DNA of 58,424 nt, from assembly GCA_044892505.1 (NCBI GenBank), contig CM097883.1:403439577-403498000 (forward strand), in the 5' to 3' direction. The position numbers and the translations under genes were made by a program. The notes below the pieces were generated by a model. It was not told the origin of the DNA. It worked only from the letters and a program-made list of their open reading frames with translations, and made no database searches. The stretch is from Schmidtea nova (lineage: Eukaryota). Each line of letters begins with the position of its first letter. Position 1 is the stretch's first letter. Positions 14 through 57,060 of this stretch are shown piece by piece.

Positions 14-197
14 GATAATGCCCATAATGGATGACTAAAGATCAAAATTTTTTTAAATAAGTGCACAATATTTCGGCACAGCCTTTATCAAGTGTGTATT
101 TCAAATACACACTTGATAAAGGCTGTGCTGAAATATTGTGTTATTGTTTATAAAAAATATTGTGATCTATAGTCATCATTATGAGAATAATAAATTA
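14..197. repeat. Foldback (palindromic) MITE
   Basis: Arms atatttcggcacagcctttatcaagtgtgtattt / aaatacacacttgataaaggctgtgctgaaatat, outer arms atgactaaagatca / tgatctatagtcat. Related copies at about 1018-1137, 32025-32150, 42385-42480, 46085-46170 and 50679-50800. Confidence 0.85.
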
Positions 198-8210: not shown

Positions 8211-8435
8211 TTCTGATGTTATTTCATCGTATAGTTCGATAATAGTTCGATAATAGTTCGATTATAGGTCGATAACAAAATAATTTAAAAAACAAACTAT
8301 GTGTCGATTGATTTTTTGGTTAATAAATGTATTTCGTGGTTTTCTCTCAAGTCATTATCTTTCTCACTTAGCATCAAATAGATTATTTAACTTATATAAA
8401 TGGTCGACGTTAAATGTTCTACCTCGTTAATTATA

Positions 8436-9060
8436 GAGATTCGCGAATGGATGCAGTAAAAATCTCCAACATCTTCAATCACAATCGATAGGATCGCCTG
8501 CTAAGAGAATAACAGCGGTCGATCCAACGGCTGACGGCTACCAACGAGCAGCTCAAGCAGAAATGGTTTGCTCCAGACGAATGAAGAATCAAATAATGAA
8601 AACCACTCGGACACAGAAAGCTCTAACAGAAACTAAAGCGGAATTGGATGCAGTGCAACGAGAACTACGAAGTTGTCTAAACTCCATAACCAGGCTCTAC
8701 ATCGATATGGAGCTTCGAGCCATCATTAGGCCGATTACAGCCCAAAGATGGACTTCAACCGAATTACAGAACCCCTCAGTCGGAACCGAATGCAACGATC
8801 TGCTGTCTACACACACAGCCCAAATCCAGCCACTGTCAACTTACCTACCAAATCCTGTGGCCATCTCGAGAAAGAGACGATCATGGTCGAAACAGTGGCG
8901 ATGTAAATGAGGATTTGCGCAACAACTAGCCGCGCAAGTAGACCGCTTAGCGATCTGTCCGAATTCGAATAGTGAGACAGTTTGTATTTATGTATGGTTA
9001 TGGACGAGGCATCCCTAGCATACCTACGTAATTATTTAAAACCCACCCATAAACCCAGCA
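8436..9060 (+). mobile_element. Family X 3' fragment (copy a): frameshifted ORF B plus terminal block
   Basis: QLKQKWFAP/(frameshift)RRMKNQI..ELRSCLNSIT..LRAIIRPIT..SVGT..RKRR matches ORF B. Ends aacccacccataaacccagca like the other copies. Confidence 0.8.
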
Positions 9061-9689: not shown

Positions 9690-10555
9690 ATTTTCTAGTA
9701 TGGCAGCTGAAATTAATGGAAAATGAATCAAAGTCTGCAAATGAGTGTGCCGAAACCATAAGTGCCATTAGGCAGAAATAGGGGTTCTCAAGAAGAGAAT
9801 CATTCAAATGGAGGCACATGAAAAAAACTAGAGCGAGCACAATGGACAGGAGTCAATTTACCGCTGGAATTGGATGCGGTTCGATTAGAATTAAGGAACT
9901 GCCGTAAGAGCATGACGCAAGAGTTTATCGACGCCAACCTACGAGAACGGATCCGGCCGTTTACCTACGACGAATGGACAAAACCGTCATCCTCAACCGA
10001 AGCTAATAAAACCCCGCCAACGTATCCACAGGTACTGGATTGAAGCCAAAACGAAACCAAATTGGATCTAGACAACGAAGTCACCAACAAAGAGGGACGT
10101 TCGTTCGACAAAATTACGACACAATTAACATGATGGACCTATTGGCAGAAATCGTCGTATTATAAATTCTGTGTTGTAATAAAGCTAAATATACCCTTGC
10201 AGCGCTTTATGTACTTTCTTGATATAATTCAGTACTGTTCATTTTGTTTCGTCCCGTACATTAAATGCTGTAAATAAGATAGTTGAGAGAAAAGGATGTC
10301 TCAAAAATTAGTGACCGGCGACGGGATGTGAAAAGATTTAGAAATTGTCTTTCATTGACCGAGGAGAAGCCGTAGTAGAGGCAAGCCGGGAGGAGTTGGC
10401 CTCGAGATTGCTCATCTGCCAACTTGATCTATGCCGAAGTGTACAGCACTAACATGAGAACAAAAGAGTCTCCTGGGTACACACTCGTTAAGGAAGTATT
10501 TATGACGGTGTCCACAACAAAATGCGCTAAGACAAATCAACTGGTACACCCAACA
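9690..10555 (+). mobile_element. Family X 3' fragment (copy b): decayed ORF B, structured RNA and right terminus
   Basis: ELRNCRKSMTQEFIDANLRERIRPFTYDEW..MDLLAEIVVL*, then AATAAA, RNA motif at ~10360-10485, terminus cccaaca at 10549-10555. Confidence 0.8.
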
Positions 10556-11799: not shown

Positions 11800-12498
11800 T
11801 ACAATTTGTTAAGTAGTATGAATGCTCTTAATGGGTTTCGTTGTTGATTTATGTAAATGTAACTCCTAGTAATGAAGGGGTTTAAGCAAAGGTTTCTGAC
11901 AAACCGAGAGTTAAATAACGACACTAGGTGAAAGATTTAGAGAATTGAGAAGGAGAGTTAAGCATGATATGACTCGTGGAGTTTGAATTAATGATAATAT
12001 AAAATTCTCTTTTAGACATGCCCCCTTTCTCCTTGGAAACCAGTAAAGAAATCGGGGCGAAGTCAGAAACAAAGGAGGAAACGCCATCAACTTAGGAATA
12101 CGCAATTTCAGACTCAGTTAATGAATCAAGTCAACTGATTAGACAAATTGAGTGAACTGGAACTGACCGATGAAATTGTAATCCTGTGAAATGTGTATGT
12201 GTGTAATTATTTGTGTTTTAATATATTTTGGCGCTAAAGTTCTGTTGTACAGAATTTGTGTTTATCTCTTATCGACCGAAACGAACCCAGTAAAAGAGGT
12301 GGTCAACAGAGAGTGGTTTTGGAAAAGGAGCTCACCTGCTTGTTGAGTCTCAGACCACGGTATACAGTACCAACGCAATCATCTATAGAATGATTGCGAG
12401 TATGTACATGGGGGTCATTCCTAGTGTCCATATTCGTTTTCTTGTGTGGTGTATGGATGACAGTGAGTCCTTAGCGAAGAGAGTCTAAATCACCCATC
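11800..12498 (+). mobile_element. Divergent family X 3' fragment (copy c)
   Basis: Stop-riddled ORF B-like frames (ELRRRVKHDMTRG..; KLSELELTDEIVIL*), RNA motif at 12265-12410, possible terminus cccatca at ~12492-12498. Confidence 0.6.
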
Positions 12499-13879
12499 AC
12501 ACCACAAGACACAACAGAAATTGTTCAACAGTATAAGTATAAGTATAAGTATATTGTATAGTAATAATTTATGTGAATACTCCTTCGAATACGCAAATGA
12601 AGAGGCTAGAAGTTATCTGAAAATTTGATTTCATTCATCACAAAAAAATATAATTTAATATTTTAGGTTTAATTCTACAACCGGTATCGACGGAAACGCA
12701 AGTGTTACTGCCTGTCAAATCCGTGTCGACATTTCGGCATTTTATTCAGTTTATGCGCACCCAATAGATGAAGAATATTTAACGGAAAATACAAGGATTT
12801 TACGCACAGTTGGTGCTCCCGATCCCTGTTCCACGGTAAGAAACAATAAATAATGATTTGGTTATGGCATCATGCAGAGAATCTTTTGAGATTTCACAGA
12901 ATGAGCAGAAATTAAATAATCAGCTCAAGTAAATTTGACTGATAAAACATAATAAAACAGCCAATGAGATCACAAAGTACTTCCTCTTATCTGTCAGTGA
13001 CCAACTCACTAATTGCATCAATAATTTTACGGGTGTGCATGGTGTGCACGGTGTGCATCACACACGGACACGTGATGCCTACTACCTCGCGAGTAATAAT
13101 ATTCGTCACTATTTTTATCATTTTCTGTGCATTTTTTAACTGAAATTTTCGTTTGTTTTCATTTCATCTTTAAATAATATTGTATTTTCTAATAAGAATG
13201 TAATAATTATAAATGTTTAAAGGTACACAAATTGTTTTTGTTACTTTTATTACTATTAGTTTGTGAATTTATTTTAATTATTTTTAGATCTAAAAATGTA
13301 TCCATTTATTTGCGCGCACAGCTTCACCAAACCGCAGGACTGACACTGCGTAAAAAATTTACAATCTTTAGTTTATTTTCAAAATTTTCATTTAAACTAA
13401 ATTTAATAATTATTTCAAACAGGTGAAACGTGCTTATCAGCTACATGGATATTTGTCGGTCCATATAAGCTCAAGGCAGACCATAAATAAAAGTTAAGAC
13501 CATTTCATGGTTGTATATATATATATATATATATTCTTGGGTCTACCAAAGATCTAAAAAGCACAAAAACATAATAACAATCAAAACAAGATAATGAAAA
13601 AGTAAACTATTAAAACATAGAAAACCTAATGAAAAGGATAAAAACAAAAAATTATGTAAATAATAAATTACCAATAAGAATAAAATAAGCCGAATTGATG
13701 GAGAATAGGCCGAAAGAAGATCTAGAATAGAAATATGGAAAATTCGCATAAAATTAAGAAAATAATAGTACAATTTATTAAATAATTATTTGGAAAAATA
13801 AGACCACCAGGCGAGAAAATCTAAAACTGAACTAGAATCAGGTAACAATTAATTAAAAATAATGAACTAACTTTGAAGG

Positions 13880-13950
13880 GCGGCCTGATCCTGATTGGTC
13901 AATCCAACCAACGCGATCAGTATAAATACCGACCCGAAAATCAGATTTTT
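13880..13950 (+). promoter_or_regulatory. Family X Pol II promoter (GC box, CCAAT box, TATA, Inr-like TCAG)
   Basis: gggcgg..ctgATTGGtc..(about 27 nt)..TATAAATA..aaaTCAGa. Same spacing in six copies (13890, 17500, 26038 plus; 27945, 30392, 31514 minus). Confidence 0.8.
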
Positions 13951-14899
13951 AGAATTTTTTAAGTTTTAAACTTGGAGACTTAAAATGACTTAACAGTTTT
14001 TAAGCGCTCACTAATTCAACTAATATTTTTCAAGAAGCACGTTGACATTGAAAGAAAAAGTAAACATTTTGTTATTGTTTCGAATAATTGTTCCCCGTGA
14101 TTTCGTTTTTATGTTAATATATGTTTTTAAGTTGCTCATTATTTTATTTTATAATATTTAATTATTTTAAATATAAATATGCTTCCTCAGTAGCTCACGC
14201 TGCGAGGGCGCAAGCCGTCTTCGTGGGGCTTTTTAGATCCACGAGATGGTGAGTGAGATAATATTTATAGGCTTAATAGAAGTTGCACGTAGAGACAATG
14301 TTTGTTGAATAAACGTTTTTATATAACCGTTTTGACTACCTACTTCACATAGGGACAATTTTTATACACAGTTTATTTTTGATAGCTTGATTTCGTATTG
14401 CACACAGTGACAGTGTTTTGAAATATCTTTTTAGATCGACAAGTTTGATTTCAATATCGCTCATAGGGATAGTTTTGTGCTAAGCATTTTAATACCAATA
14501 GTCCTGATAGCGACAGTTTTAATAAAGCGCTTTGATGCCGATTGAATTTGATCGATTCCAACTAGTAAAGAGTTTTGATAAGACATTGTGACCGGTTGCA
14601 CTTCGTAAATAGTTTCGATAAAAGTATTTTGATCCATGCACGTAGAGATAATTTGACTAGACATTTTTGATAACTCTGATCGCTGCACATAGCGACAGTT
14701 TTAATAAAACATTTTTTTATATCAATAGTTCCGATAAACATTTTACATAGCAACAATTTTCCGATAAGCATTCGTCGATGGTTTTGACTTCATAGTTTTC
14801 AAAGCGACCATTTTTTAATAAACTACTTCTATCCCGATTAAATTCTGATCGTTGTACATTGTTTCGTCGCGTCCAGCTCCAATTGATTTTCTGATTCCT

Positions 14900-15793: not shown

Positions 15794-16134
15794 AGACTAA
15801 CAAAACTCTCCTTCACAAAACATTTATTCAATAATTTTCATAAAATTATTAATACATTTTCAAATCTTTTTTAAATCCCCAACTCAAAATATCTTTATAT
15901 TCTAAAAACCCACACAGGCAAAATAATCAAAATAGCCCAGATAAACAATTCGTCAAAAGCCACTTTTCAAATCAAAAAACCCCAATAATCCTTAAAAACT
16001 GAAACAGTAAAACAACACTGTTTTTAAACAAAACTTTTTAGATAAATTCCAAAACCTTCCATCGATCACTTTTTAATTTTTTAAGCGAAAATCAACATCA
16101 TCGCGTCTGTGTGTGCACACCAAGAAATCATGAC

Positions 16135-16902
16135 AACCAACCTGCCAGGGGTCGACACAAGTATATCGCAGCGATACAATTTGTTCATTGATGCTCTCAT
16201 TTCGACTCCACCGTACGAATAGCTGCATTTGACTTATGAATCACGGCACAATCTGTTGGCTACAGTGAATATTTGTCGGCACAATTCCCGTGTTGGGACT
16301 AGAATCACACATTTCGGGGAATTTGTATTAATTTTTTCACCAATATTTTCTACTATATCCTTGATTATTGGCACAAGAATTGCTACTGTTTTACCACTTC
16401 CGGTTTGCGCACATGCCATTAGATCTCTCTTTAATGTTATCATCGGAATTGTGTATTTCTGTACCGGCGTTAACTTTTTATAATCGAAATTGCGGATATT
16501 TGCCAGTAGGAATTCGGGTAGTTGTAATTCCTCAAATGATGTTATCGATTCTGGGATGTTTCTGCCGGTTACGTGGACTTGAATGTTGTCATAATTGTCG
16601 AAATTAATCCCACTATTCACGTGGAGTTGATAATCTTCAGCGTTGTCATCGGGAATGTAGCTAACTCGGGGGATTGTCATAGGAATATCTCCATCTTCGA
16701 TGAGTTTCACACGATTATTATTGTTATTGCTATATTCACGGACGGATTGGGAGAAATTCTCTTTGTTAGCGTTGATATTTAGCTTGTCAATTGAGAGGTC
16801 TTCTTGCTCTACTTCGTGGGAATTATTATTAGGTGTATTAATGACATTGTTCAACCTCCGTCCCCGTCCACGTCCAATTTCATTGAATTTACTGGTATCC
16901 AT
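16135..16902 (-). pseudogene. vasa: 3'-truncated Vasa/DDX4-like DEAD-box helicase fragment with a premature stop
   Basis: SYIP..GINFDNYDNIQVHVTG, Q motif TPVQKYTIP, AQTGSGKT, PTRELCRQI, TAA at 16236-16234, then in-frame YGG..CDILVSTPGRL. No DEAD motif follows. DDX3/PL10 is not excluded. Confidence 0.8.
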
Positions 16903-17487
16903 TTATAAGTATCGATAATAAATCACTTTATCTTATTAAAATTTTGCCTTTAACTTTTCTATGTAAGATTTATATAGATTTCGATAAGACCGTCTAACGG
17001 CTTCCGGCTTCCAGGCACGCCCACATCTCTCATAGCAATCAAGCCCCCAATTAATTATTTTAAATATTATTTAATTATTTTTAAAAATATTTTAAAAGCG
17101 GGCGCGACCATACATAATGATAGTTTTATTGCGGATCGTACCTAGTAATAGTGTTGGGCCCGCCAAATAGGCTAGAACAACAACAATAGAACGAAAGTTT
17201 AAAATAATAATGAAATAATAAACATAAAAATAGCAATAAAGACAAATTAAAAATAGGAATAAAATAGCAAATAATATTTAATAAGTTTCCAGTAAAAGGA
17301 AATTTTAAAAATAAACCGGTAAATAACAGCAAAAGGGGGCCTGAAATAAGAAAATTAAGAATTTAATAAACTAATAGTACAAATAATTAATTAATTACTC
17401 GAAAAACCAGGACCACCCAGCGAGAAACCGGAAAAGGAAATAAAATAATGTTTAGATTTAAATAAAATAATAAAAATACTTTGATGG

Positions 17488-17550
17488 ACGGTCTGATCCT
17501 GATTGGTCAATCCGACCAGCCGGATCAGTATAAATACCGATCCGAAAATC
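17488..17550 (+). promoter_or_regulatory. Family X promoter (CCAAT + TATA)
   Basis: ctgatcctgATTGGtcaatccgaccagccggatcagTATAAATAccga, itself an imperfect inverted repeat. Confidence 0.8.
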
Positions 17551-18606
17551 ACAACTTTAACTGTTATTTTTTAACAAAACTCGTTCAAGGAAACACACAC
17601 TTTTTATCAAAACTAAACTTTGATTTTAAAAAAACTCGTTCACTGTTAGAAACACATTTTGAAATTTTACTCTCACACAAGCCACCAGGAGATACCTACG
17701 AAGTAAATTTTGTTTTGTTTTAAATTGTGTATTTTCTATTGATATGTACCATGATTTTATCCATTAAAATTTATTTATTCTTGCCTTTAATTATCATTAT
17801 CATTATTGTTTATCATGCATATAGTCATACTTCCTAGGCTGCTCACGCGGCGAGGGAGTCCAAGTCGTCGTTGTGGGGCTTCACGGCCTCACATGGCGGT
17901 TCAACCTTTTTATTTTTTGTAATTTAGTAATTTGGAAAAGTTGGTTTAAATCAGGAAATGTCGAAAATTCGAATTAAATCCGGACGATTTATTGGCGAGA
18001 ATAAAGGGTTGTAATGTTCAATTATTTCCATACTTATTTAGGTTGATAAAATTTTAATCACGAAATGTCAATAATTCGACTAAGTCCAGACGATTTTCTG
18101 GCGATAAGTAAAATATCATTTGTTCGGTTGCACAAAGGGCGTAACGTGGTGAGCCGTGGGAAAGGTTTAGAGAGATGTCGGAAGGTGTGAAGCACCCAAG
18201 GGGTGGTAGGTATCAGCCTCCGAGGTATTAATATTCTAGGATAACTTTTGAACTCAGGAGCGCAAGCGAGGTGCTATAAGTTTATAGAAATTTTCGATAG
18301 AATCGATTGAAACTATCAGTTCATTTGGGGTCAAAGTGCAGGCATTAGAATATCAATCTGAATAACATAGACGAATTACGTCACAAAATTCCAAATCAAA
18401 TAAATTTAACATGTAACCAATTCTATAAATATCTTTATGCCGATCGCTGTATATAGCGCGGTAATTCAAATAAATCTTATCCTGATCGTCGTACATACTA
18501 TCCGACCGTGGTATATCGCGGCGATGATGTAACGTTAAAATTTCCTTACCCGAAAAGTATTCATGTCTAATAAAATTTATTTAAAATTCTTTAAATGAAA
18601 TAATAG

Positions 18607-19083
18607 ATGTCGACAGCTTGGAGTGAAAAGTTAACTCGGATCCGGAATTCAGGAAAGGAGGACATGGCGAATAGATGGGCTAATCAACTCAAGGAGTTGC
18701 CCCCGCCGATTTTACGTACCCTCAACGCCCAGGTATATAAGTGGCGACGCGGATTCAATCGGATATGCCCGTTTTCCATCTGGAGTGGAGGAAAAGATCG
18801 AATTCTCTATCACGGAGGACCTGATTGGCCACTCTCGGGAAAAAGCTACCCTCGCAAGTTCGGACGACTGATTATCGTAATCCGAGATGGCAATGATCAA
18901 CCCTGCCGAATTATCTACTGGGGACACATCCCTCGCAAGGAACTATGCAGGCTAGGTTTACAGGAGTTCCTACCACGGAAATCGTTTGGCAAAGAATGCC
19001 AGGAGGGACAACCTCCATTTTCGTGGGCTCAACTTCGGCAAATGCCAATTAACCATGAGTTACATAGCCTGTTTCGGCGATGA
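18607..19083 (+). CDS. Family X ORF A, 158 aa, unknown Trp/Gly/Pro-rich protein
   Basis: Intact ORF. AG acceptor immediately before the ATG (18605-06), AATAAA about 25 nt after the stop. Paralogs at 20935, 29328 (minus) and 27002 (minus). Confidence 0.8.
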   Translation: MSTAWSEKLTRIRNSGKEDMANRWANQLKELPPPILRTLNAQVYKWRRGFNRICPFSIWSGGKDRILYHGGPDWPLSGKSYPRKFGRLIIVIRDGNDQPCRIIYWGHIPRKELCRLGLQEFLPRKSFGKECQEGQPPFSWAQLRQMPINHELHSLFRR

Positions 19084-19248
19084 AATTTTGTTGACAGTGA
19101 TGATTAGTGAATAAAATCTTATTATTAATTAGTGGTCTTTGTTCTGGTTTTATCGTATTTTGACATAACAATAATTCACTTATATTGTAAATATAAACAT
19201 GTTTTAACATAAAAGCGGCAAATCATTGAATTTAAATCAATTACAGAA

Positions 19249-19845
19249 ATGAATATAGAAACAGCGCAAAGAGAACTCGAAAAGATGTGGAGAATCCGGA
19301 GAGCCCAGGACAAGGAATTGGGTCTCCTCAAGGAACAATTATCCAAGGCCGAGGCGCAAATCGCCTATTTGCGCAAAAGCTGGTTCGCTCCAGCTCGAAT
19401 GAAGGAACAGATTGGTAAAACGGAGCGTGCACAACGAACAGCAGAGGACTAAAAAATGGAATGGGAAGCTACGAAAATCGAGCTTCGGAAGTGCCTACAT
19501 TCCGTGACAGCCTCCTACATCGAACGGGAGCTGCGGGATCAAATCCGACCGGTAACTTATCAAGAATGGACGGCGGAGAAGAAGAGTGTAACTTCGATTG
19601 GCACAGACGTCGACGACCTTAGCGAAATTTGCAACGGGCCAGTTCCAGAAATCAAAGCGGCCACCCAAACTGCCAATACTCATCAGAAACGTAAGCGCAT
19701 AGGGCAGAAAAGGCGCCGTCAAAGAAAGCTGTTCGCTCAACGGATGCAGAACCAAGTCGACGATCTGCACAAATTGACAGAGAAGGAACTATTGGAAGAA
19801 ATATTTCCCCCAGCCGGAATTTTTACCGATTTGATTGGAAAATAA
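19249..19845 (+). pseudogene. Family X ORF B (coiled-coil + basic motif) with one in-frame TAA
   Basis: The two listed ORFs are one frame split by TAA at 19450-52, at the position where the paralog has Tyr (AEEYLVKWE). Acceptor at 19245-46. Confidence 0.85.
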
Positions 19846-20021
19846 ATACGAATTTCAAATTTTGGTCATTCTTGTTGTTTCATTAATTTAGTTTTTATTA
19901 ATAAGTAATAAGCAAATAAATAATTATGAGAGCGCTAGTTTAGGAAGCTTCCTGTAGAATAAATGATATCAAAGACCAATGTTCCGAAAGTTTATTGTGG
20001 ATTACATAGTATGTCATTAAA

Positions 20022-20170
20022 GCGTAAGTCCTTCTAACGGCAGCAATGAACCCGTAAACATAAATGGGGAGTAGTACTAGCAATAGTGCTCACCTGCCCA
20101 TCATTGTTTAACCACACTGCGAATCACCAACTTGATTACCCAGGGAAATAATCAAGGGCGCTTGAGTGTA
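20022..20170 (+). ncRNA. Family X conserved structured RNA (copy R3)
   Basis: AGTACTA-GCAA-TAGTGCT hairpin, GGAGT/CACCTG core, and a second domain with an ATCACCAA loop and a cttgatta/taatcaag stem. Covaries with five other copies. Confidence 0.8.
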
Positions 20171-20934
20171 TAATTGCACATTTTATGTATGATCATGGAT
20201 GATGGATTAGTCATTGTTAGAACATTTTTCGTCTAACCCCTCCATGAACCCAGCAATAGTTTCGATTTCATATTTTATAGCACTAGTGTGGATTTCACCG
20301 TTTATAGCGATAGTTGACGACACCTTATTCTTAATATTAGTTTGAGTTTTTAACATTTATTTTTGCACAGTGAGGATTGTGAGCCACACAATTTTATATC
20401 AACCAAGAGGACGATGTTAGCGTTGGTCTCGCCAAATAATGCTTTGTTACCCGTATAAAGTTCCATCCAGAGGACTAATGCTACAATCAACATCAGTTTA
20501 ATGATTATATTAGATATATCTAGCGTACGTCGGTATGCCTAATTACTAGTTGGCATTAGATAAGTCACCCATAGATATAACAGGGGTGTTAGACAAATTG
20601 ATTTAGAAATACCTGTGTGATATTTAGACGGGGTTCTAGGTAGAGTTTTATGGGGAACTGCAATTCACGTATGCTCAGTCACGACTATTAAATAAGAATG
20701 CACAAAGTATCATCGCCACACCTATATAATATAAAATTTATAAAACCATAGTTCACCTGAATCAATTTACAAATCAGTCATACCCGATAATATCAGGCTT
20801 AATTATACTGTATAATAAGAATTTTCCAAGAATGGAATTATCACCTAAAATTTTCATACCGAGGATTGAGGCGAAAATATTCGACAAAAGATTTAAATAA
20901 TGATTATATAACTATTTGGTGTTTTCCAATGCAG

Positions 20935-21459
20935 ATGGAACCTAAATCAATAGAACAGTGCGGGGCAGCTCAGAGAGGGATAACTAATCCAACTGGCATT
21001 TCATCAAGGAGGACCAGTCAAGGGATGAAAAATCTACCACCCCCGATTCTGAGGACGGTGAATGCACAAATGTTCAAATGGAGGCGGGCATTCGGGGAGA
21101 AAAGCCCATTTTCTGTTTGGGAAACCGGTCGAGACAAGGTGATCTATCGAGGAGGCCCCGGTTGGCCAATCTCAGCAAACCAATGTTATTCGTCTAAATT
21201 CGGGAGAATCATCATCATTGTCTACAATCACAATCAGGAGCCGCAAAGAGTGATATATTGGGGACACATCCCTCAAGGCAAACTCGCCGAACAAGGCCTA
21301 AATTTGTTTACTTCGCCGCGCCCTCTCGGAAAAACGCATGAGAAAAGGATGCCAGATTTTTCACTCGCGGGACTTCGTCAAACCTCCATCGATGCGGGCC
21401 TCCACGTTGTCCATGTGTTTACCAAACTATGGCATAATATTGTGATTGATACCCAGTAG
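20935..21459 (+). CDS. Family X ORF A paralog, ~174 aa
   Basis: cag|ATG start, LPPPILRTVNAQMFKWRR..PFSVW..YRGGPGWP..IYWGHIP, AATAAA just after the stop. Confidence 0.8.
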   Translation: MEPKSIEQCGAAQRGITNPTGISSRRTSQGMKNLPPPILRTVNAQMFKWRRAFGEKSPFSVWETGRDKVIYRGGPGWPISANQCYSSKFGRIIIIVYNHNQEPQRVIYWGHIPQGKLAEQGLNLFTSPRPLGKTHEKRMPDFSLAGLRQTSIDAGLHVVHVFTKLWHNIVIDTQ

Positions 21460-21623
21460 TCAATGAGAATAAATTTGTACCTAAATTTGTTTTTTGTTTG
21501 TCTTAGCAAAGTATTGTTTATTTTACTCATAAAACATCTAGATATTTTACTATGAGTATTGTTAAAAAGCAATTAAATTTCTACTCCTATTTTTCCAAAA
21601 CCTAATTATCTTATTTGTGCAGA

Positions 21624-22217
21624 ATGATCCGAGAGACAGATCCCCAAGCCGAACGAGAGAAAGCTTTGAGAATACGAATTAGTTTAGAAAAAGAAATTAA
21701 GCAAGTAAAAACCCAATTAGCTCAAGCAGAGGCACAAATCCAATATCTAAGTAAGAGCTGGTTTGCGCCAGCGCGGATGAAAAATCAGCTGACTTGTACG
21801 GAACGCGTCCAGCGAACAGCGGAAGAATACCTGGTCAAGTGGGAGGCAAATAAAATCGAGCTCCGAAAATGCCTCCACTCAGTGACGACCTCATTTATTA
21901 ACACTGAACTCAGAGCACAGATCAGGCCCATCACGTATGAAAATTGGGTGGGATATAAGAAACCCGCATGTTCAGTAGGAACTGATGTCAAGGGTTTGGA
22001 GGCCGTAACCGTTTTAACTCCACCACAGGTCACGGAAATCGCTGCAAGTTCCAACAGCATTAAGAAGAGAAAGCGAATAGGATTCAAGCGCCGAAGACAG
22101 AAGAAACTGTTCGCTCTGCAGTTGCAGGAACATGTCGAACGAATGGCCGATATGAGCGAGATGGATTTGCTAGCTGAGATTCTCACACTCAACAGAGATT
22201 TTCAAGAATTATTATAA
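21624..22217 (+). CDS. Family X ORF B paralog, ~197 aa, intact
   Basis: cag|aATG start, heptad-like N-terminus, WFAPARMKNQ, ELRKCLHSVT, KRKRIGFKRRR, LLAEIL, AATAAA after the stop. Confidence 0.8.
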   Translation: MIRETDPQAEREKALRIRISLEKEIKQVKTQLAQAEAQIQYLSKSWFAPARMKNQLTCTERVQRTAEEYLVKWEANKIELRKCLHSVTTSFINTELRAQIRPITYENWVGYKKPACSVGTDVKGLEAVTVLTPPQVTEIAASSNSIKKRKRIGFKRRRQKKLFALQLQEHVERMADMSEMDLLAEILTLNRDFQELL

Positions 22218-22355
22218 TTAAATAAATTTCGACGCCATAACGCATTTTTCTTTTGTCTTATATAGTTTAAGGAGTTTGTAATCTGATTAAATCCCTATTT
22301 AAAAGACGTTTTTATTTATTTTTGAAATTTGAGCATAAATATTGCGAACATAATA

Positions 22356-22500
22356 GCGTAAGACCTTCTAGCGGCAGCAGGAACCCGTGAAAATAAATGG
22401 GGAGTAGTTCCAGCAATGGAGCTCACCTGTCCATCATTTTTCAATCACCTTGTGCATTTCCAACCTAACTGTATGGGGAACAGTTAGGGGCGCTCGATTG
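22356..22500 (+). ncRNA. Family X conserved structured RNA (copy R4)
   Basis: AGTTCCA-GCAA-TGGAGCT and cctaactgt/acagttagg, compensatory relative to R3. Confidence 0.8.
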
Positions 22501-23659
22501 ATATAGTGTATGTTTATGCATGATTATGCATAGGGTCTCCCTAGCATAGTTACATATCATTTTCTCAACCCTTCCATAAACCCAGGAATAAATAAATATA
22601 TTATAAATTTTTAATTTACTGTAAAATTAAATTAGTATAAAGCAGCTTATGCCGTTCCCGTCAAAGAATAGGTAACCCTCACGAATAGTATATTTATTGG
22701 ATATTTGGCACTGGAAACGGGAAACAAATCTTGCAAAACGTAAAAAGGAAGAATACGTGATAGTGGCGAGTGTCACTCTGTTTTTATTTTAAATTTGTAT
22801 TTTTCTAATCATAATTTGGGGAAAAAAAGTTTTTTGTAATTTTTATTGCCAATTTTCGTAAATTTATTTTGGCAATTACTTTTAGATTTGAAAAAAATGT
22901 ATCCATTTATTTTTGTCACCACAAACCTTAGGACCCACCATTATCGTAATCCAAGCAATTTATATAACTATTTTAAATATGCTAAAAAATATCAGGAAAA
23001 CTAATCTTTGTTCTAGTAATTTTAACTACCATTAATTTTTTGTGATGCTTTTGTCTTTCATTATTATTTATTCATTTTATATTATTATTTCATTTATTAT
23101 TTGTTTTGTTGGATTGGTTATATATTGTTTTTTTCAAATAATTGAGTGAACCTGTGCCGAACCTCCAAGCAGTTCTCAAGGTTACGAATCACTGCAGTAG
23201 TAGTATCTGCGGAAGAATCGAATCGAAGAAAGACAAACACAAGTTCATTATTGCAAGAACCTAATATAACTGACGTTGAGACTTTCGATATTCTAGCACG
23301 TCGGCCTTATGAATGACAATGACGTCGAGAGATTTGGATTTAGTTATTGATATGTTACAATAAAAGTATGAATTTCAGTAAATGAATAAATTTAACTAGT
23401 AAAGTATAAACACTTTTGCTAGAAAATGACGGAAATGATTTCAGTGGTTAACCTTACAAAATTTGACCTAAGTAATTACGCTAAATTTAGTGAAGGGTTT
23501 ATTATAATTATTATTACAATTGTTGTGTTCTGATATAAAAATGATGGATCTTAAAAACAAGGAAAACCAAAAACATAGTTAAAAATCATCGAAATATTTA
23601 AAGTCCGAAAATTAATTGAAATTTCAGAAAAATTAATATTTACCGGGAGAAACAGATAT

Positions 23660-25672: not shown

Positions 25673-26835
25673 TGTTGGGACAGCAAAACATCTAAATAGG
25701 CAAAAACATTTACGATTAATTAAAACAAAAAGTTAAAAAGTTAATTAAATTTAGTCCTAAAGGCCAACCAGAACTAAAAATAAATAAAGTAAAGCCTCAT
25801 AAAGGAAATAATAAATTACCAATTATAGGATTATACCCAAAACGTCAGGAACCACGGGATAAAGAAAATATAGAATGGAAAATATAGAAATAATAACAAA
25901 TTTAATAAATAAAAGTACTTTTTATTAAATAATTGACCAAAAAATTGGACCACCGAGGTAGGAATGGTAATCTGAAAATAAAATAAGATAAAATTAATTA
26001 AAATAATGAGATCTACTTTGAAGGGCGGCCGGATCCTGATTGGTCGGTTCAGCCAGAGTAAACAGTATATATACTGATCCAAATCTCGTATAAGAGCAAT
26101 TTTTTTAAACTGTTCACACTGTGAAATTGTCGACTCAACATACATTTTACAAACATTAAACTATTCAAAACTATAAATTGAAGCTTTGCCGAAGAATTTC
26201 GAAGTAATTTTTTTCCGTTTGATTGCCTATGATTTCATCTATTATGATTGTAATGTTATTGTATATATGATTTTGTTATGATAATATGATTTTTACTATG
26301 AATTATTATATATTGTTTTATATATTTATATGATAATTCCTTAAAGATTTTTGAGCGCTACCTTAAGAGCTAAATGCTACGAGGGCGCAATCCGTGGTCG
26401 TGGAGCTCAGTAGTTACACGCCATGGTGAGTGAATTTAAATATATGATTTTAACAAATTTTAACTATCTGAGCGAACAGACGAAAATTCGTAGAGATTTG
26501 CACATGGGACAGTCAACATAGCGTTAGATCGTGCTATATAAAACATTCAAAATAGCGTCATGCATATTCCACACACAACACATTAGCACTGCAGTAGAGT
26601 GACACACGGGCAGTTGAATCGAATTGCAGCAGTTCGATAACTAGATCCTTCCAGTGGTATAATATTGATTGCACCACATAAATCGCGACTAGAACACTCA
26701 AAGGGCATCAAAGTGGCACAAATATCCAAATGACATCGTATTAATGCGACCGTAGAGTAACAACGAAAATGTCAGATCAGTTCAACATATAGACTAGCAA
26801 ATAGCGCAACACAGACAGACAGAGCGAGTTCTAAT
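25673..26835 (+). mobile_element. Family X 5' fragment (copy f)
   Basis: TGTTGGG start, promoter 26025-26075, leader hairpins 26357-26425, ATG|GTGAGT donor, cacatgggac intron motif. Confidence 0.8.
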
Positions 26836-26839
26836 TAAT

Positions 26840-28329
26840 CGGTAAACCACCTGTTGACCACCTGAATGATTTCGAATGGTGCTGGTTTTAGAGGGCTGAT
26901 CCGCACTCGGTTTCGTTTGAGTTGCCCGTTTTTCTATCCCCGCTGATTCTCTTTCCTTTTATATACTTTCGGTTTTCTCTTTAGTAGCTTCATATTTGAC
27001 ATTTTGTCTAGACAATGACACAAAAAAAATCATTTATTATTTTGGAAAACGTATTTGTGAAATATAATATTCTCTCTCCTCGCACATTGTATTTTATTAC
27101 ACGCTTTCCCTTTATGTACTGGGTCGAGTTTACGATGAGAAACTGTCGATCTAAGTTAGTAAAAAACATATATTACTGGTATCTGCTCTCTAACCTTTGA
27201 TTGTTCTAAATGAGCCTATTTGTTTGGAATTACTGTTGAAAATCTACAGTTTGTAGTTATTCTGCAGTGATATTACTTCGGTGCATGTTGGAAAAAGGTT
27301 TTCGTTCGAAAAACTTCGGGTACCTTCTAATAACGCATCTCATGTCTACTCTGGGTTAGGCTGTTTCAGTACTTAGAAAAATTCAGTAGAATTGTGCCTT
27401 CATCACAACACTTTTGTGTAATTTCTCGCCCCTTGATTTCATTGTCCCATGTGCAACTCTGAAAAAACTTTATTATATTTTAGACATTATTGACTTCTCT
27501 ACCGGGTGTAAGGCCTCTAAGCACCACGACGCGGACTTAGACCCTGGGAACATGTAGCTCCCATTTGGCGCCCTAATATCTATAGTTATAATATAGTGTA
27601 AAATCATCAAAATTCAACAAATTATAAAATATAATGATATAAAACATGATTACAATTATACGGCATAAATCATATAGCAATAAAATATTAATACACATAA
27701 ACCAAAGTACCTAAATTTGATCCGCAATTTTCGGTAAAAATTCTGTCTAAAATATGCTTGTCTGTTGTCCTGAAAATCAGTCTAAATCGAATCAAGTTCA
27801 AATTGAATTCACTCAAGTAAATGCAGTGCAATGGCATATAAGGCATGTTTTCAACTAAATTCTGATCAGTATATATAGTATATTGGTCAGTCTAGACCAG
27901 ACAGATCAGTATATATTATATACTGATCTGTCTGGTCTAGACTGACCAATCAAGTTTGGCCGCTTCCATGGTAGGTCTCATTATTATTTTGTTTTACCTA
28001 ATTAATTTTTATTTTTTCAGGTTGAACTCTCTCTAGGTGGTCCTAATTTTGGATCAATTATTCAATAAAAAGTACTTTTATTTTGTTTAATTTGTTTAAT
28101 ATTCTACATTTTATTTGGTTTTAGATTCCTTATTCAATGACAAATTTATGATTTCTCTTGGCCACTCTATTCCCTAATTTATAAATTTATCTATAATTTA
28201 TTTATAATTTATTTATAATTTATTTATGTCTTTTAAATCCAAAATTTAAATTTCTTAATCTACGTTTTTCTTTTTTGTTTTAATTATCACTAATTTTTTT
28301 CCTTTTTACTCTTTTTAGCTGGCCCAACA
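26840..28329 (-). mobile_element. Family X 5' fragment (copy g) with truncated ORF A (ATG 27002)
   Basis: TGTTGGG at 28329, promoter palindrome, hairpins 27503-27575, acceptor 27008-10, MSNMKLLKRK..LKPAPFEIIQ. Confidence 0.8.
27882..27950. repeat. Perfect 33-bp-arm palindrome duplicating the CCAAT-TATA promoter
   Basis: attggtcagtctagaccagacagatcagtatat-tat-atatactgatctgtctggtctagactgaccaat. Confidence 0.95.
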
Positions 28330-28803
28330 AACTTATAAAACCTAGTTAATTTCGGACCGGATTCAAAATGGTATCCGACAAAAATAAGAGATTTGAGAGA
28401 ATGGGGTAACTTTTAAAAGGGGAAAAACCAGAAATCGAGCCGGGGCAAAATTTATCGGGGCATTATAACGACTCTCTCATCTGATTTGATTTAGGATAGA
28501 CCCCAGAGGGACGTTCCCGTCACGTTTATGAAGGATATAAAGCATGAATTATATAAAGCATGTATTCAACTTATTACAACGGTAAATTTATCGGTGGCTT
28601 ATATTTTACTTAAATAATATAATATTATAATGTAGGAAAATGAGCACTATTAATTCTAATACAAGTATTGACTGAATTTTTATGAATTTGTTGAAACTTT
28701 ATCATCGCCGCTTCAAGAATTTTAGAGGTTTAATTTATTGTGCTGAATTACTAACAAAATGACTAAAAGAACTTGCATTTACTAAAACATTTATTGAATT
28801 AAA

Positions 28804-29328
28804 TTATTCGCTGGACATTTTTCCTCGATAGGAAAATATGGTCCGGATTTGCAGATTCATTTTGACTTCGGTGGGAAGGTTGGCAGTAGTTTTCAGCCGT
28901 TCTTTTTCGGCTTCCCGGAGTGGTCGGATTGCGACATTGAAGATGATCCCCAGCTCCTTGAATGTTGAGACAGGAATATAACCCCAATAAATTACGAAAT
29001 TCGGGAATCCGTTTTCGACCAGCATTAGGATAAACCACTCCGAGTGTCATCGTTCGAATTCTTCACCCGGAATTATGGGCCAGTTAGCACATCCTCGGTA
29101 CCATACGTGATGGCGTGGGTGATCCCACACGGTGAAGGGACATGCAGTATCTAATTCCCTCCTCCAGGCCCACATCTTCTGGTGAACCTACTGGATGATA
29201 TCGAAAGGAGCGGGCTTTAGACGACTGATCCGTACTATATTTCGCTTGAGCTGACCGTTTTTCCATCCCCACTGATTCTCTGGTTTGACTGCTCTCCGTT
29301 TTCTCTTTAGCACATTTACATTTGACAT
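28804..29328 (-). pseudogene. Family X ORF A with two in-frame stops
   Basis: LKPAPFDIIQ*VHQKMWAWRK..CPFTVW..YRGCANWP..ER*HSEWFILM..VIYWGYIP in one frame. Confidence 0.85.
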
Positions 29329-29600
29329 TTTTCCTGGACAAACACAAAAATTTTATCATTTATTATTTCAAATAATAGTCAGGTTAAATTTAATATTCTC
29401 TCTCCTCGCTCGTTGTAGTTTAACACGCTTATACCCTTGATGCTCTGGGTCGTTGTTATGATGAGGAAAACTGTCGAACTGAGATGGTAGAAACTTATAT
29501 CTTTACTTATGTCTAGTCTCCGATTTTTATTGTTTTAATTGCGCTTATTCGTTCGTCTATCACTGTTGCCAATTTACGGGGTGTAATTACTCTGTAGCGA

Positions 29601-29927
29601 TGTATGCAAAAAATGCTTTTGACCCAAAAAATTCATTCTCATGGCGCCTCTCATGTCTATACCGGGGTCGGCTGTCTCAATAATATAATTCTCTCACTTC
29701 AACTAATTCGTGTGATTTGCTGACCCTTAATTTCATCTGTCCCATGTGCGAACCTCTAAAAAATGTATGCAAAAAATGCTTTTGACCCAAAAAATTCATT
29801 CTCATGGCGTCTCTCATGTCTATACCGGGGTCGGCTGTCTCAATAATATAATTCTCTCACTTCAACTAATTCGTGTGATTTGCTGACCCTTAATTTCATC
29901 TGTCCCATGTGCGAACCTCTAAAAAAT
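29601..29927. repeat. 162-bp near-perfect tandem duplication in the family X intron
   Basis: Units start at 29601 and 29763. One visible substitution (gcgcctc / gcgtctc). Confidence 0.9.
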
Positions 29928-30771
29928 GTTATTATAGCTTAGATGTTACTAGTTTTCCTGAAAACTTTAATATATTTTAAACGTTTCCAACTCTCATACC
30001 GGGTGTGGAGCCTCTAAGCACCACGACGCGGATCTACACCCTGGGAACTTGTAGCTCCCATTTGGCGCAATAATTATATATGACACTGATTAAAATTATT
30101 AATATATAACATATAATTATTATAACAAAATTTACAGCAAAAATCATGAGCGACAGCATTAAAATAATAAAACCAAAGTACCTAATTCACAATTCTGGTT
30201 TCGAAATTCTAGATACGGTAATACTAGGTCCAACTATAGTCTAGTTTCAATTGATCGGCTGGATAGTTGTATTGAAAAAAATCAGTCAAGTTAGATTGAA
30301 TCAAAGTCTAGTCTAACTCAAGTCAAAATTTGTTCATGTTTTTAACTGAATTTCAATCGGTATTTATATCGATTTGGCTGGATCAGACTAACCAATCAGG
30401 TTTGATCGTCTCCACCGTAGGTCTCATTATTTATTTTATTTACCTAATTAATTTTTTGTTTTTCAGATTCAATACTCTCTAGGTGGTCCAGTTTTCCAAC
30501 CAATTTTCCAATTACAAGTACTTTTATTTTATTAAATTGTTAATTTTCTACATTTTATTTGTCTTAGGTACCTCTTATGACGGCTAATTTTAAGATCCAT
30601 CTAAAACTTCTCTATAATTTATTTATAATTAAATAGTAATTTATTTATCTTTTATTTATATTATCCTTTTTTTTTACATTTAACATTCGCATTTCTTAGC
30701 TTATATTTTTTCCTTTTGTTTTAATTGTTATTCATTTATTTTCCTTTTTTCTCTGTTTAGCTGGTCCAACA

Positions 30772-31875
30772 CTATGTACAGCTCTAACTTCGTTTAGCAG
30801 ATGTATTACTACAGTATCTTAATACCAATTTGTACATCTAATTCTCTCACGAATAAGAATGGCTTTGGTTGAACTCTGTTTTTACCAATATGCCAAACGA
30901 TGCCTATGTGAGAAAAATTTCATTCAACTTATGAAGCGAAAACTTCGTTACTATGTGGAATATTAATCACAATCCCTACAGCGGGTATAAACTGTTTTCT
31001 ACGGGATTCTAGTTTATTGCGTATAATATTGCTCCTATAAAATCAAAACTCGTGCAACATAATACCTCAACAGCCTATCACTATGTGCCTCAAACAACTG
31101 TGCAAAATGTCTCTATGTGCAACTCTAATCAACAAAACCAAAAAACTTTCTCACTCACCGTCTCGTGGCGCTGAAAAGTCCCACGACGATGGCTGGCTCC
31201 CTCGCAGCGCTAGTTACCGAGGAAACATATCTATTAAAAATCAATAAATGAAAATTTATATGGTTAAAATAATGCATAAATAGAATTCATTATATCATAA
31301 AAACAAAATCATGAGGAGGAATCAAAATATACTAATACAAAACAATGAATAACATTACTTTCACTTCCAATTGCCAAAGATTCAAATTTCTAATAAATCA
31401 GTAGGTGCTCAAAACAGTTGAATAGTTTCAAGTCACACAAATTTGAAAATATAAAAATTCTAAAGTTCTGATTTTTGGGTCGGTATTTATACTGATCTCG
31501 TTGGTCAGATTGACCAATCAGGATCAGGCTGCCTTCAAAGTATACTCATTATTTTTAATTAATTTATACCATATTTTATTTCAGCTCTAAATTTCTCTCC
31601 GGGTGGTCTCCATTTTTTAAAGTAATTATTCAATTAATTGCACATTTATTTGATAATTTTTAGGCAAATTTTGCTGTTTTTTAGTTTTAGATTTGTTGTT
31701 GGCCTGTTCCTCATTTATTCGAATTATTTTATACTTACAGGTTATTTATTATTACTTAATTATTTATTTTTATCCTTTTTCTTTAGGTTTTCCTGTTTCA
31801 ATAAAATTATTTTTATTATTTTGTTTTAATGATTGTTAAGTTTTTACATTTTTAAGTCTTATGGTGGGCCCAACA
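30772..31875 (-). mobile_element. Family X 5' fragment (copy i), interrupted by copy h
   Basis: TGTTGGG at 31875, promoter 31484-31518, hairpins 31159-31226, ACG|GTGAGT donor, cacatag repeats. Confidence 0.8.
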
Positions 31876-35722: not shown

Positions 35723-36128
35723 TGTTGGTGTTCTGGTGTGGACATCGGAAAATTTTTGAACGTGACCTGGGGATGGATGTCACTCACACCACAACATAAA
35801 TGTATATCTATCAAGTTCGCACACCCATGGTGATTCCCCGGATAACCATGTTGGAACTGTGTACGACGGTGAGAGGATGGAGGACAGGTGAGCCCCTTTA
35901 CAAAGACTACTCCCCCACGCTCCCTTCAACGGGTTCTGGCGGCCGTTAGAAGGTCTTACGCTTCTCATCTGTTTCTCTGTCTTGCACTACACTCTAGTTT
36001 TCGAAATTTAAATTATTATAAAAAACACGAATCATTTGTTTAATTATTATCTTAATTAAAATCTTCCATTTGCTTTTTACTTGAATACGAAATAAACACA
36101 AGTCGGAGAGAAAATACATTTATTATTC
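35723..36128 (-). mobile_element. Family X 3' fragment (copy j) with RNA motif R5
   Basis: Minus strand gcgtaagaccttctaacgg..gaacccgt..GAGT AGTCTTT-GTAA-AGGGGCT CACCTG..acac AGTTCCAA catggt/accatg g gtgt, ending accaaca at 35723. Confidence 0.85.
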
Positions 36129-38126: not shown

Positions 38127-38238
38127 GTCCACGACCATACTAGTCTGGGTTCATCCGATCTCGGAAGTTAAGCAGGCTAAGGCCTCGTTAGTACTTGGAT
38201 GGGTGACCGCCTAGGAATACGAGGTGTTGTGGACTTTT
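38127..38238 (+). rRNA. 5S: 5S rRNA copy with an internal deletion of about 10 nt (likely pseudogene)
   Basis: Helix I GTCCACGAC/GTTGTGGAC, helix II TAGTCTG/CAGGCTA, box A AGTTAAGC, box C TGGATGGGTGACC, T4 terminator. The loop B/helix III region is shortened. Confidence 0.9.
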
Positions 38239-56383: not shown

Positions 56384-57060
56384 TGTCGGGCACCGAGTCA
56401 TGGCCCCATGGCCCTCGGGTTATGCAATATGTTACCGTTAAACTAGCTATTCTATGAAATAGCTTCATTATACACAGCGTTTTTGGTGCTTATTTAAATT
56501 TTGTTTATCTAGTCGCAATGCAACACATAAAAAGCTTACTGTCCATGTACCAGTAAATAACCAATGTACTTACGTTGGTAATGTACATGACAGGCGAATG
56601 TGAATAGACAGGTGAGCTTCTTTGCAAAAGCTACTCCTGATTCTACCATTCTCGCGGGTTCCCTAGTGACCGATAGAAGGTCTTCACTTGATCCCGTCTC
56701 ACCCTTTGTCACTGGTCACTAATTTTAAGGTGCATTCTCTGTGATTTTATATTCACTATTTACATGCGCATTTACAAATTTACCCTATATGATCCTGTTT
56801 ACTTTTGTTTTTAATTTCAAAGCAAAAAGAGTCAACACAATGGAATACATTTATTTATGATCCTTATTTACAATACAAATTTTATTGCACATTCTGGGAT
56901 TCTATCATCTTTTGCATCAATTGTCTATTCTTTCGTTGACGTTTCTGCGAGCTAATCCTCTTACGCTTTTTACCCTTTACTGGCGGCTTAATTGATGTAG
57001 TGTCTTAGCTTTCAATTTCACGTGGTGTAGGGTACCATTTTGACAACGAATTTTGCGATG
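56384..57060 (-). mobile_element. Family X 3' fragment (copy k): ORF B C-terminus and RNA motif R6
   Basis: KGKKRKRISSQKRQRK, AATAAA, then aagaccttctatcgg..gaacccg..GAGT AGCTTTT-GCAA-AGAAGCT CACCTG..catgtac ATTACCAA..gtacatg. The end may be cccgaca at 56384. Confidence 0.8.

What the first reader, a model, noticed from the sequence alone, without database searches (positions are those of the whole stretch)
17152..20255. Unassigned TG...CA mobile element carrying its own spliced two-gene cassette but no RT, integrase or transposase
Seen: 3104 bp with 7-bp inverted ends (TGTTGGG/CCCAGCA) and an exact 4-bp ATAG duplication. Inside, in order: A-rich arm, CCAAT+TATA promoter, leader, intron, ORF A, ORF B, structured RNA. 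About 11 diverged copies or fragments lie in this 58 kb. Known: TG..CA ends with a 4-bp TSD are the footprint of Gypsy/retroviral-type (or Ginger) integrases. Inference: either a giant gene-encoding solo LTR or a stand-alone non-autonomous element moved in trans. No copy here is followed by a PBS or preceded by a PPT, which favours the second.
Basis: partly seen in the sequence, partly recalled or inferred. Interest (0 to 1): 0.95.

Follow-up and report, generated by a model that had tools for sequence, protein, structure and literature searches.

The report
Gene-carrying LTR-type mobile unit family
A real 3.1-kb mobile unit with retrovirus-style ends carries its own promoter, two conserved orphan genes and two conserved RNA folds but no replication enzyme, so it is either an unusually gene-laden solo LTR or a new kind of dependent element.

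Summary
17152-20255 is a sharply bounded unit (TGTTGGG...CCCAGCA) flanked by an exact ATAG duplication. Its two ends are shared with ten other diverged copies or fragments in the window.

All six 5' ends carry the same A-rich arm, inverted CCAAT box and TATA box. Synonymous sites are saturated while pN is 0.26-0.38, so the proteins have been under purifying selection.

Two sense-strand RNA folds are supported by compensatory changes: one in the leader and one just inside the 3' end, downstream of the poly(A) signal. Copy 1 is nested in the long intron of copy 2, and another copy is nested in the same way. Both sit at ATAG inside a repeat array that these introns carry.

No RT, integrase or transposase domain turned up in any ORF scanned. 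Neither protein has a relative in very large protein sets, and neither fold matches Rfam.

One window cannot separate the two readings. The promoter - poly(A) - structured-tail layout leans towards a giant gene-bearing solo LTR (about 0.5) over a stand-alone unit moved in trans (about 0.3).

The parts
17148..17151 (.). left copy of the 4-bp target-site duplication (ATAG)
   Evidence: read; chance of a match 0.006
17152..20255 (+). copy 1, the complete 3104-bp unit of the finding
17152..17167 (+). conserved 5' terminus (TGTTGGG...), shared by six copies
17168..17490 (+). A-rich arm (54% A)
   Evidence: alignment
17490..17560 (+). core promoter: short palindrome around an inverted CCAAT (17502-17506), TATAAATA (17529-17536), and an Inr-like TCA about 20 nt downstream
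   Evidence: invariant columns in six copies; the transcription start itself is inferred
17561..17702 (+). predicted leader exon, ending at a GT donor (17703)
   Evidence: donor position shared by six copies; no RNA data
17703..18606 (+). predicted intron from the leader donor to the AG directly before the ATG of gene A; poorly conserved, holds a 107-nt tandem duplication and array-like motifs
   Evidence: homology between copies is lost here
17831..17899 (+). leader two-hairpin RNA module (GC-rich); in three other copies it is followed directly by GGTGAGT
   Evidence: 24 pairs, 8 with compensatory changes, 85% paired against 38-47% when slid
18607..19083 (+). gene A (158 aa), intact; orphan protein
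   Evidence: no relatives
19958..19963 (+). AATAAA poly(A) signal, with ATTAAA at the aligned place in two other copies
   Evidence: use is inferred
20015..20175 (+). 3' structured RNA domain (three hairpin arms, 39 pairs)
   Evidence: 22 pairs with compensatory changes, 87% paired against 36-43% when slid, 0/500 shuffles; the covariance model finds six copies
20235..20255 (+). conserved 3' terminus (...CCATGAACCCAGCA)
20256..20259 (.). right copy of the target-site duplication (ATAG)
13535..14300 (+). copy 2, 5' part (TCTTGGG end, arm, promoter, leader, hairpin module, GGTGAGT donor); abuts a (TA)10 microsatellite
14286..14760 (+). array of about 55-nt units (core ...CACATAG.GACAGTTTT) in the intron of copy 2; the motif recurs at 17111-17127 and 20252-20314, on either side of copy 1
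   Evidence: 11 matches against 1.0 expected
20256..22587 (+). copy 2, 3' part: rest of the intron, gene A2 (20935-21459), gene S/B2 (21624-22217, intact), structured domain (22349-22508), end ...CCCAGGA
8315..9060 (+). 3' fragment with an S/B-like reading frame (one stop inside the aligned stretch) and a 3' terminus; lacks the structured domain
9806..10555 (+). 3' fragment: S/B-like stretch, structured domain (10333-10495), end ...CCCAACA
12250..12418 (+). isolated copy of the structured domain
25673..26419 (+). 5' part of another copy
26420..28329 (-). copy R: 5' end at 28329, reaching to the start of the gene A region
28330..30771 (-). copy Q: 5' end at 30771 and a gene A-like frame with two in-frame stops; inserted directly after ...ACATAG of an array unit in P's intron
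31100..31875 (-). copy P: 5' part; its intron (31100 down to 30772) carries array units
35723..36083 (-). 3' fragment with the structured domain (35806-35968) and end ...CACCAACA
56451..56749 (-). 3' fragment with the structured domain (56532-56695)

Best explanation
The unit belongs to an old, diversified family of mobile DNA that is inserted by a retroviral-type (DDE) integrase. Most likely each unit is the long terminal repeat of a Ty3/Gypsy-like retrotransposon with giant LTRs, seen here only as solo LTRs and LTR fragments.

On this reading:
- The first roughly 400 nt (A-rich arm, inverted CCAAT, TATA) are U3.
- The stretch from the start site to the poly(A) signal is a greatly expanded R. 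It has become a self-contained Pol II transcription unit: a leader with a two-hairpin module and a splice donor, spliced either to an acceptor just before gene A or to one just before gene S/B.
- The last roughly 275 nt, holding the three-armed RNA fold and the CA end, are U5.

Integration makes the 4-bp duplication. It repeatedly hits the ATAG core of a repeat array that the family carries in its own intron, so copies nest in one another.

Shown: the boundaries, the duplication, the nesting, the conserved promoter, the selection on both proteins, and the two RNA folds.

Inferred: the transcription start, the splicing, the poly(A) site, the integrase, the existence of full-length partners with gag-pol elsewhere in the genome, and the roles of the proteins. 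S/B, with its coiled coil, arginine-rich helix and acidic/leucine tail, could be an RNA-binding regulator or chaperone. A is unknown.
For: - TG...CA ends, a 7-bp imperfect inverted repeat and an exact 4-bp duplication. The TGTNR start and the 4-bp duplication are the Gypsy/Ginger pattern (PMC2836005).
- Termini are conserved across copies whose synonymous sites are saturated. Copy 2 has the symmetric variant TC...GA at both ends.
- The order is promoter, then 2.4 kb, then AATAAA/ATTAAA, then structured tail, then CA, which is the U3-R-U5 order.
- The 3' fold lies downstream of the poly(A) signal. It is still selected as a sense-strand RNA, with many G.U pairs and 22 compensated pairs. That fits U5 at the 5' end of a genomic RNA.
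- There is no terminal direct repeat inside the unit, and its own transcript would lack both ends, so a single unit cannot be copied through RNA.
- Nested insertions are typical of LTR elements.
- Precedent from memory, not retrievable here: the Gypsy-class element Woot of Tribolium has 3.6-kb LTRs (PMID 8722793, cited in PMC2397513).
Against: - No paired copy, PBS, PPT, gag, RT, RNase H or integrase remnant was found anywhere in 58 kb that holds 11 copies or fragments.
- An R region of about 2.4 kb holding introns and two genes has no precedent that I know of. The known LTR-borne gene (MMTV sag) lies in U3, upstream of the start site.
- Eleven copies of deeply diverged lineages within 58 kb, with no other RT-bearing element in the window, is unusual for LTR retrotransposons.
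- The organism could not be identified, so no catalogue could be consulted.
Confidence: 0.5

Rival explanations
1. Stand-alone, LTR-less, non-autonomous element. The 3.1-kb unit is the whole element. It is moved as double-stranded DNA by an integrase or transposase of the Gypsy/Ginger type supplied by another element. Its two genes and RNA folds serve its own expression or its dealings with the host, not replication.
For: - Two units (copies 1 and 2) have both ends and both genes and no enzyme gene.
- None of the termini seen faces a PBS or PPT.
- No pol or gag remnant was found in the window.
- Both proteins are under purifying selection, as expected if the unit itself is what is selected.
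- Strong local clustering and self-nesting.
- The inner variable region of copy 2 holds host-gene-like ORFs, as happens in the interiors of cut-and-paste elements.
Against: - No element class with 7-bp LTR-type ends, no LTR pair and no enzyme is known.
- A conserved sense-strand RNA fold downstream of the poly(A) signal has no role in this model.
- No partner integrase is in the window.
Confidence: 0.3
2. Internally deleted derivative of a Ginger2-like cut-and-paste DNA transposon. The lost transposase gene would have lain where the variable 'intron' now is.
For: - TGTNR start, 4-bp duplication and AT-rich targets: copy 2 abuts (TA)10, and flanks read ATAG, ATAT, ATAA (PMC2836005).
- The only poorly conserved part of the unit is the stretch after the leader donor.
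Against: - Ginger2 has 50-180-bp terminal inverted repeats; here only 7 bp match.
- No DDE domain was found in any copy.
- The RNA-level constraints are not explained.
Confidence: 0.08
3. Not mobile: a locally duplicated host gene family whose units merely look bounded.
For: - The copies are clustered.
- The genes are conserved and have a canonical promoter and splice sites.
Against: - Homology stops exactly at TG and CA, with unrelated flanks.
- Both orientations occur.
- An exact 4-bp duplication flanks copy 1.
- One unit sits inside the intron of another, twice.
Confidence: 0.03

Closest known systems
Solo LTRs of Ty3/Gypsy retrotransposons with giant LTRs (Woot of Tribolium castaneum, 3.6-kb LTRs; from memory, PMID 8722793)
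   Same: TG...CA (TGTNR) ends, short inverted repeat, 4-bp duplication, kilobase size, promoter near the 5' end, poly(A) signal and tail near the 3' end, nesting.
   Different: No paired copy or gag-pol interior is seen here. The unit holds two selected, apparently spliced genes between the promoter and the poly(A) signal. Whether the Woot LTRs encode anything could not be checked, because the paper is not held.
MMTV LTR carrying the sag gene
   Same: A protein-coding gene lies inside an LTR.
   Different: sag lies in U3, upstream of the LTR start site, and is a single ORF. Here both genes lie downstream of the unit's own promoter and have their own acceptors. There is no sequence relationship.
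Ginger2/TDD DNA transposons (PMC2836005)
   Same: TGTNR ends, 4-bp duplication, AT-rich targets, integrase-type insertion without reverse transcription.
   Different: Ginger2 has 50-180-bp inverted repeats and a DDE transposase. Here the repeats are 7 bp and there is no transposase.
Non-autonomous LTR derivatives (LARD, TRIM, TR-GAG)
   Same: They depend on a partner's enzymes. TR-GAG elements keep a structural gene.
   Different: All of them keep a pair of LTRs with PBS and PPT. This unit has no internal direct repeats.

Membership tests
LTR of an LTR retrotransposon (solo LTR) | 5'-TG...CA-3' ends with a short inverted repeat | tested here: met
   TGTTGGG...CCCAGCA. Six 5' ends and the 3' ends are conserved.
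LTR of an LTR retrotransposon (solo LTR) | 4-6-bp target-site duplication | tested here: met
   ATAG/ATAG for copy 1 (chance 0.006). Copy 2 has ATAT/ATAA, 3 of 4.
LTR of an LTR retrotransposon (solo LTR) | The same unit occurs as a direct pair around PBS - gag-pol - PPT | tested here: not met
   No pair, PBS, PPT or pol/gag domain in this window. The rest of the genome could not be searched, so the test is only local.
LTR of an LTR retrotransposon (solo LTR) | U3-R-U5 order: promoter, then poly(A) signal, then a short tail | tested here: inconclusive
   The order is right, but promoter and poly(A) signal are 2.4 kb apart with two genes between them, and there are no RNA data.
Ginger2/TDD DNA transposon | Terminal inverted repeats of 50-180 bp | tested here: not met
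   Only 7 bp (6 matching) are inverted; criterion from PMC2836005.
Ginger2/TDD DNA transposon | TGTNR ends and 4-bp duplication at AT-rich sites | tested here: met
   TGTTG; ATAG; flanks ATAT, ATAA, TAAA.
Ginger2/TDD DNA transposon | DDE integrase-like transposase in autonomous copies | tested here: not met
   No such domain in any of the 149 ORFs scanned. The genome outside the window was not testable.
LARD / TRIM / TR-GAG | Pair of LTRs flanking an interior with PBS and PPT | tested here: not met
   No direct repeat between the two ends of the unit.
Known RNA families (Rfam 15) | Match of either structured module to a curated model | tested here: not met
   No match even at E <= 1 over 17152-22600.
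Known protein families (Pfam, PDB, 1.84 billion representatives) | Sequence or fold relative of gene A or gene S/B | tested here: not met
   The only hit (P0001) is a low-complexity chance match (hhalign probability 9.8%).

The most novel reading that the evidence does not exclude
The 3.1-kb unit is a complete element of a kind not yet described. It would be an LTR-less gene cassette with retroviral-type ends that encodes no replication or integration enzyme. It would be inserted by a borrowed integrase, would keep two proteins and two RNA folds under selection, and would carry in its intron an array of the very motif (core ATAG) into which new copies of the family insert.
Probability: 0.3. 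Interest if true: 0.85.

Novelty: new variant of a known kind. Interest (0 to 1): 0.62.

Why it matters
If these are LTRs, they show that an LTR can evolve into a complete, spliced, two-gene transcription unit that stays expressed after the interior is lost. LTRs are normally treated as non-coding, so such units are masked and their genes go unannotated.

If they are stand-alone units, they are a new way of being a parasite of integrase-bearing elements.

On either reading:
- The two proteins and two RNA folds are orphan families with clear signs of selection.
- Insertion into an array carried by the family's own intron would be a tidy example of a 'safe haven' that an element provides for its relatives.

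Tried and rejected
Searches that came back blank:
- Exact-sequence look-ups of five window proteins.
- Word-based homologue searches with gene A, an S/B alignment and the RING ORF.
- A full HMMER scan of 1.84 billion representatives with a gene A profile gave one hit, rejected as low-complexity chance.
- Back-translated scans of metagenome and viral contigs and DNA motif scans of viral contigs (the single hit is a chance match in a 45-kb viral contig).

Because of these blanks the organism was not identified and no catalogue of its repeats could be consulted.

Structure and family searches:
- The AlphaFold model of gene A was too poor to use (pLDDT 39.8).
- The S/B model is all-helical and has no fold match.
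- PDB profile searches gave only coiled-coil noise.

Ideas rejected:
- Short 'mini-LTRs' inside the unit: none found.
- The GC-rich leader block as a primer-binding site: the positions after its TGG vary between copies, and the conserved GGTGAGT fits a splice donor.
- Helitron, Polinton, DIRS and LINE readings: rejected on ends, duplication length, and the absence of a poly(A) or simple-repeat tail.

Literature: searches for LTR-borne genes gave only MMTV sag. The Woot paper is not held.
Full report
**1. The observation**

The window is AT-rich eukaryotic DNA (about 31-33% G+C). It has eight N blocks, which I left alone.

At 17152 the sequence reads TGTTGGG and at 20249-20255 it reads CCCAGCA. 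ATAG stands immediately outside on both sides. The inverted ends match at 6 of 7 positions. The chance that two fixed 4-mers agree at this composition is 0.006.

The boundaries are not chosen to fit. Six copies align from the TG inwards and are unrelated before it. The 3' ends align up to the CA and are unrelated after it.

**2. The family in the window**

blastn, single-sequence nhmmer searches with every copy, tblastn and a covariance model give 11 copies or fragments.

- 5' ends lie at 13535, 17152 and 25673 on the plus strand, and at 28329, 30771 and 31875 on the minus strand.
- 3' regions lie at 8315-9060, 9806-10555, 12250-12418, copy 1 and copy 2 (to 22587) on the plus strand, and at 35723-36083 and 56451-56749 on the minus strand.

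Two old 3' ends read ...CCAACA, the exact complement of TGTTGG.

Copy 2 has TC at the 5' end and GA at the 3' end, the same change on both sides. This argues that one protein reads both ends, and that 13535 and 22587 belong together.

**3. Anatomy**

*5' side.* All six 5' parts share three things: a 16-nt terminus; an arm with 52-56% A against 34% in the window; and, in invariant columns, GGACCACC, an inverted CCAAT box and TATAAATA, followed about 20 nt later by an Inr-like TCA.

*Leader.* A GT donor follows the leader in all six copies. Further on comes a GC-rich block that folds into two hairpins:
- 24 pairs, 8 with changes on both sides;
- 85% of cells paired against 38-47% when the partners are slid;
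- 0/500 shuffles reach the observed value for three of five measures (cells paired, cells changed on both sides, covariation score) and 12-13/500 for the other two.

In three copies the block runs straight into GGTGAGT.

*Variable stretch.* Homology between copies then fails until the genes. That is what one expects of an intron.

*Acceptors.* In copies 1 and 2 an AG preceded by a pyrimidine- or AT-rich run stands 0-2 nt before the ATG of gene A, and again before the ATG of gene S/B. This arrangement is kept although synonymous sites between the copies are saturated. It suggests one leader spliced alternatively to two acceptors. That is inference; there are no RNA data.

**4. The genes**

Gene A is 158 aa in copy 1 and 174 aa in copy 2, with 47% identity.

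Other copies are more broken. The gene A-like frame of copy Q has two in-frame stops, and the S/B-like stretch at 8315-9060 has one.

Comparing the pieces apart gives pS 0.86-0.89 (saturated) and pN 0.26-0.38. Both proteins have therefore been under purifying selection over a long divergence.

S/B is predicted all-helical (mean pLDDT 72). It has two long helices, a disordered linker, an arginine/lysine-rich helix and an acidic, leucine-rich tail. No fold match was found. The model of A is unusable.

Neither protein has a Pfam, PDB or database relative. Neither has a relative in metagenome or viral contigs.

**5. The 3' structured RNA**

AATAAA in copy 1, and ATTAAA at the aligned place in two other copies, lies 40-60 nt upstream of a roughly 160-nt domain.

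RNAalifold predicts 39 pairs in three arms:
- 22 pairs show changes on both sides;
- 87% of cells pair against 36-43% when slid;
- 0/500 shuffles reach the observed value for four of five measures.

A covariance model built from five copies finds a sixth at full length (E 1.5e-10) that was not used to build it. Frequent G.U pairs mean the fold is read on the sense strand.

No further poly(A) signal lies between the domain and the end of the unit. Rfam has nothing like it, even at E <= 1.

**6. Nesting**

The intron of copy 2 carries an array of about 55-nt units, with 8 matches to the core motif at 14286-14760. The window holds 11 matches against 1.0 expected.

The motif reappears at 17111-17127 and 20252-20314, that is, on either side of copy 1. 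Compared separately, the right flank of copy 1 starts with the 11 nt that also occur in the array, and the left flank holds the GATAGTTTT core.

So copy 1 sits in the intron of copy 2, which then runs from 13535 to 22587.

On the other strand, copy Q begins directly after ...ACATAG of an array unit in the intron of copy P. These are two independent insertions, each at ATAG in the family's own intron array.

**7. What is absent**

No RT, RNase H, integrase, protease, gag or transposase domain was found. I scanned all 75 stop-to-stop ORFs of at least 75 aa in the window and 74 further ORFs of 48-74 aa around the cluster.

There is no tRNA gene. No TGG... follows a 3' end and no purine run precedes a 5' end. 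The unit has no internal direct repeats that could be short LTRs.

**8. Mechanism and weighing**

The ends and the duplication point to a retroviral-type integrase. TGTNR ends with a 4-bp duplication are shared by Gypsy LTRs and Ginger transposons (PMC2836005).

The unit's own transcript, from the TATA box to the poly(A) signal, would lack the first roughly 400 nt and the last roughly 275 nt. A single unit therefore cannot renew itself through RNA. Either it is one of two LTRs of a larger retroelement, or it moves as DNA.

For the LTR reading:
- the U3-R-U5 order;
- the 7-bp inverted repeat;
- a sense-strand RNA fold beyond the poly(A) signal, which makes sense as U5 at the 5' end of a genomic RNA;
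- the precedent, from memory, of 3.6-kb LTRs in the Gypsy-class element Woot (cited in PMC2397513; the original paper is not held).

Against it:
- no partner, PBS, PPT or pol trace among 11 copies;
- an unprecedented 2.4-kb gene-bearing R;
- dense clustering of deeply diverged lineages in a window with no other RT-bearing element.

I put the solo-LTR reading at about 0.5, the stand-alone trans-mobilised unit at about 0.3, a Ginger2-like deletion derivative at about 0.08 and a non-mobile gene family at about 0.03.

**9. Novelty**

On the favoured reading this is a new variant of a known kind: an LTR that is itself a spliced two-gene unit with two orphan proteins and two orphan RNA folds. Known LTR-borne genes such as MMTV sag lie in U3.

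**10. Slips and limits**

- I noticed this later, have deleted nothing, and do not repeat it here.
- Short degenerate patterns (21 nt at most) were used to search for termini and motifs.
Broken genes were compared in pieces.
- The organism remains unidentified, so I could not check whether the family is already in a repeat catalogue.

Noticed in passing
window 14717-16902 (-), inside the intron of copy 2: Two long ORFs lie on the opposite strand. One (222 aa) has an N-terminal part and the first motifs of a Vasa/DDX4-like DEAD-box helicase: the best PDB match is Bombyx Vasa, E 1.9e-31, and only the first 69 of 167 Pfam DEAD positions are present. The other (358 aa) has 83 residues resembling the NEDD8-activating enzyme regulatory subunit (E 7e-10). 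These host-gene-like fragments sit in intact ORFs inside a mobile unit. They could be captured cargo, a nested element or a chimeric gene.
   Followed up: partly
window 38127-38235 (+): A complete 5S rRNA gene (86 bits). About 700 bp upstream of it (37349-38035) is 68% identical to 24488-25163, next to the element cluster.
   Followed up: no
window 15-191, 1018-1097, 11523-11692, 32006-32132, 50679-50780; also 2-88 and 42399-42485: A family of short palindromic, MITE-like repeats, 82-98% alike, several of them directly beside the masked N blocks. The N blocks were left untouched.
   Followed up: no
window 1416-2117 (+) and 48145-48846 (-); 557-834 and 49048-49325: A second repeat family (85-94% identity) holding ORFs of 240-340 aa with no Pfam match.
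   Followed up: no
window 29600-29925 and 27882-27950: A 163-bp tandem duplication at 99% identity lies inside copy Q. A 69-nt near-perfect palindrome lies over the promoter of copy R.
   Followed up: no
window 43316-44701 (+): A 461-aa single-ORF protein with an N-terminal RING-H2 finger (E 7e-11). It has no relative at E <= 0.001 among the sequences sharing words with it.
   Followed up: partly
window 13514-13534: A (TA)10 microsatellite lies directly against the 5' end of copy 2. This fits the alternating AT-rich target preference reported for Ginger2 integrases.
   Followed up: no
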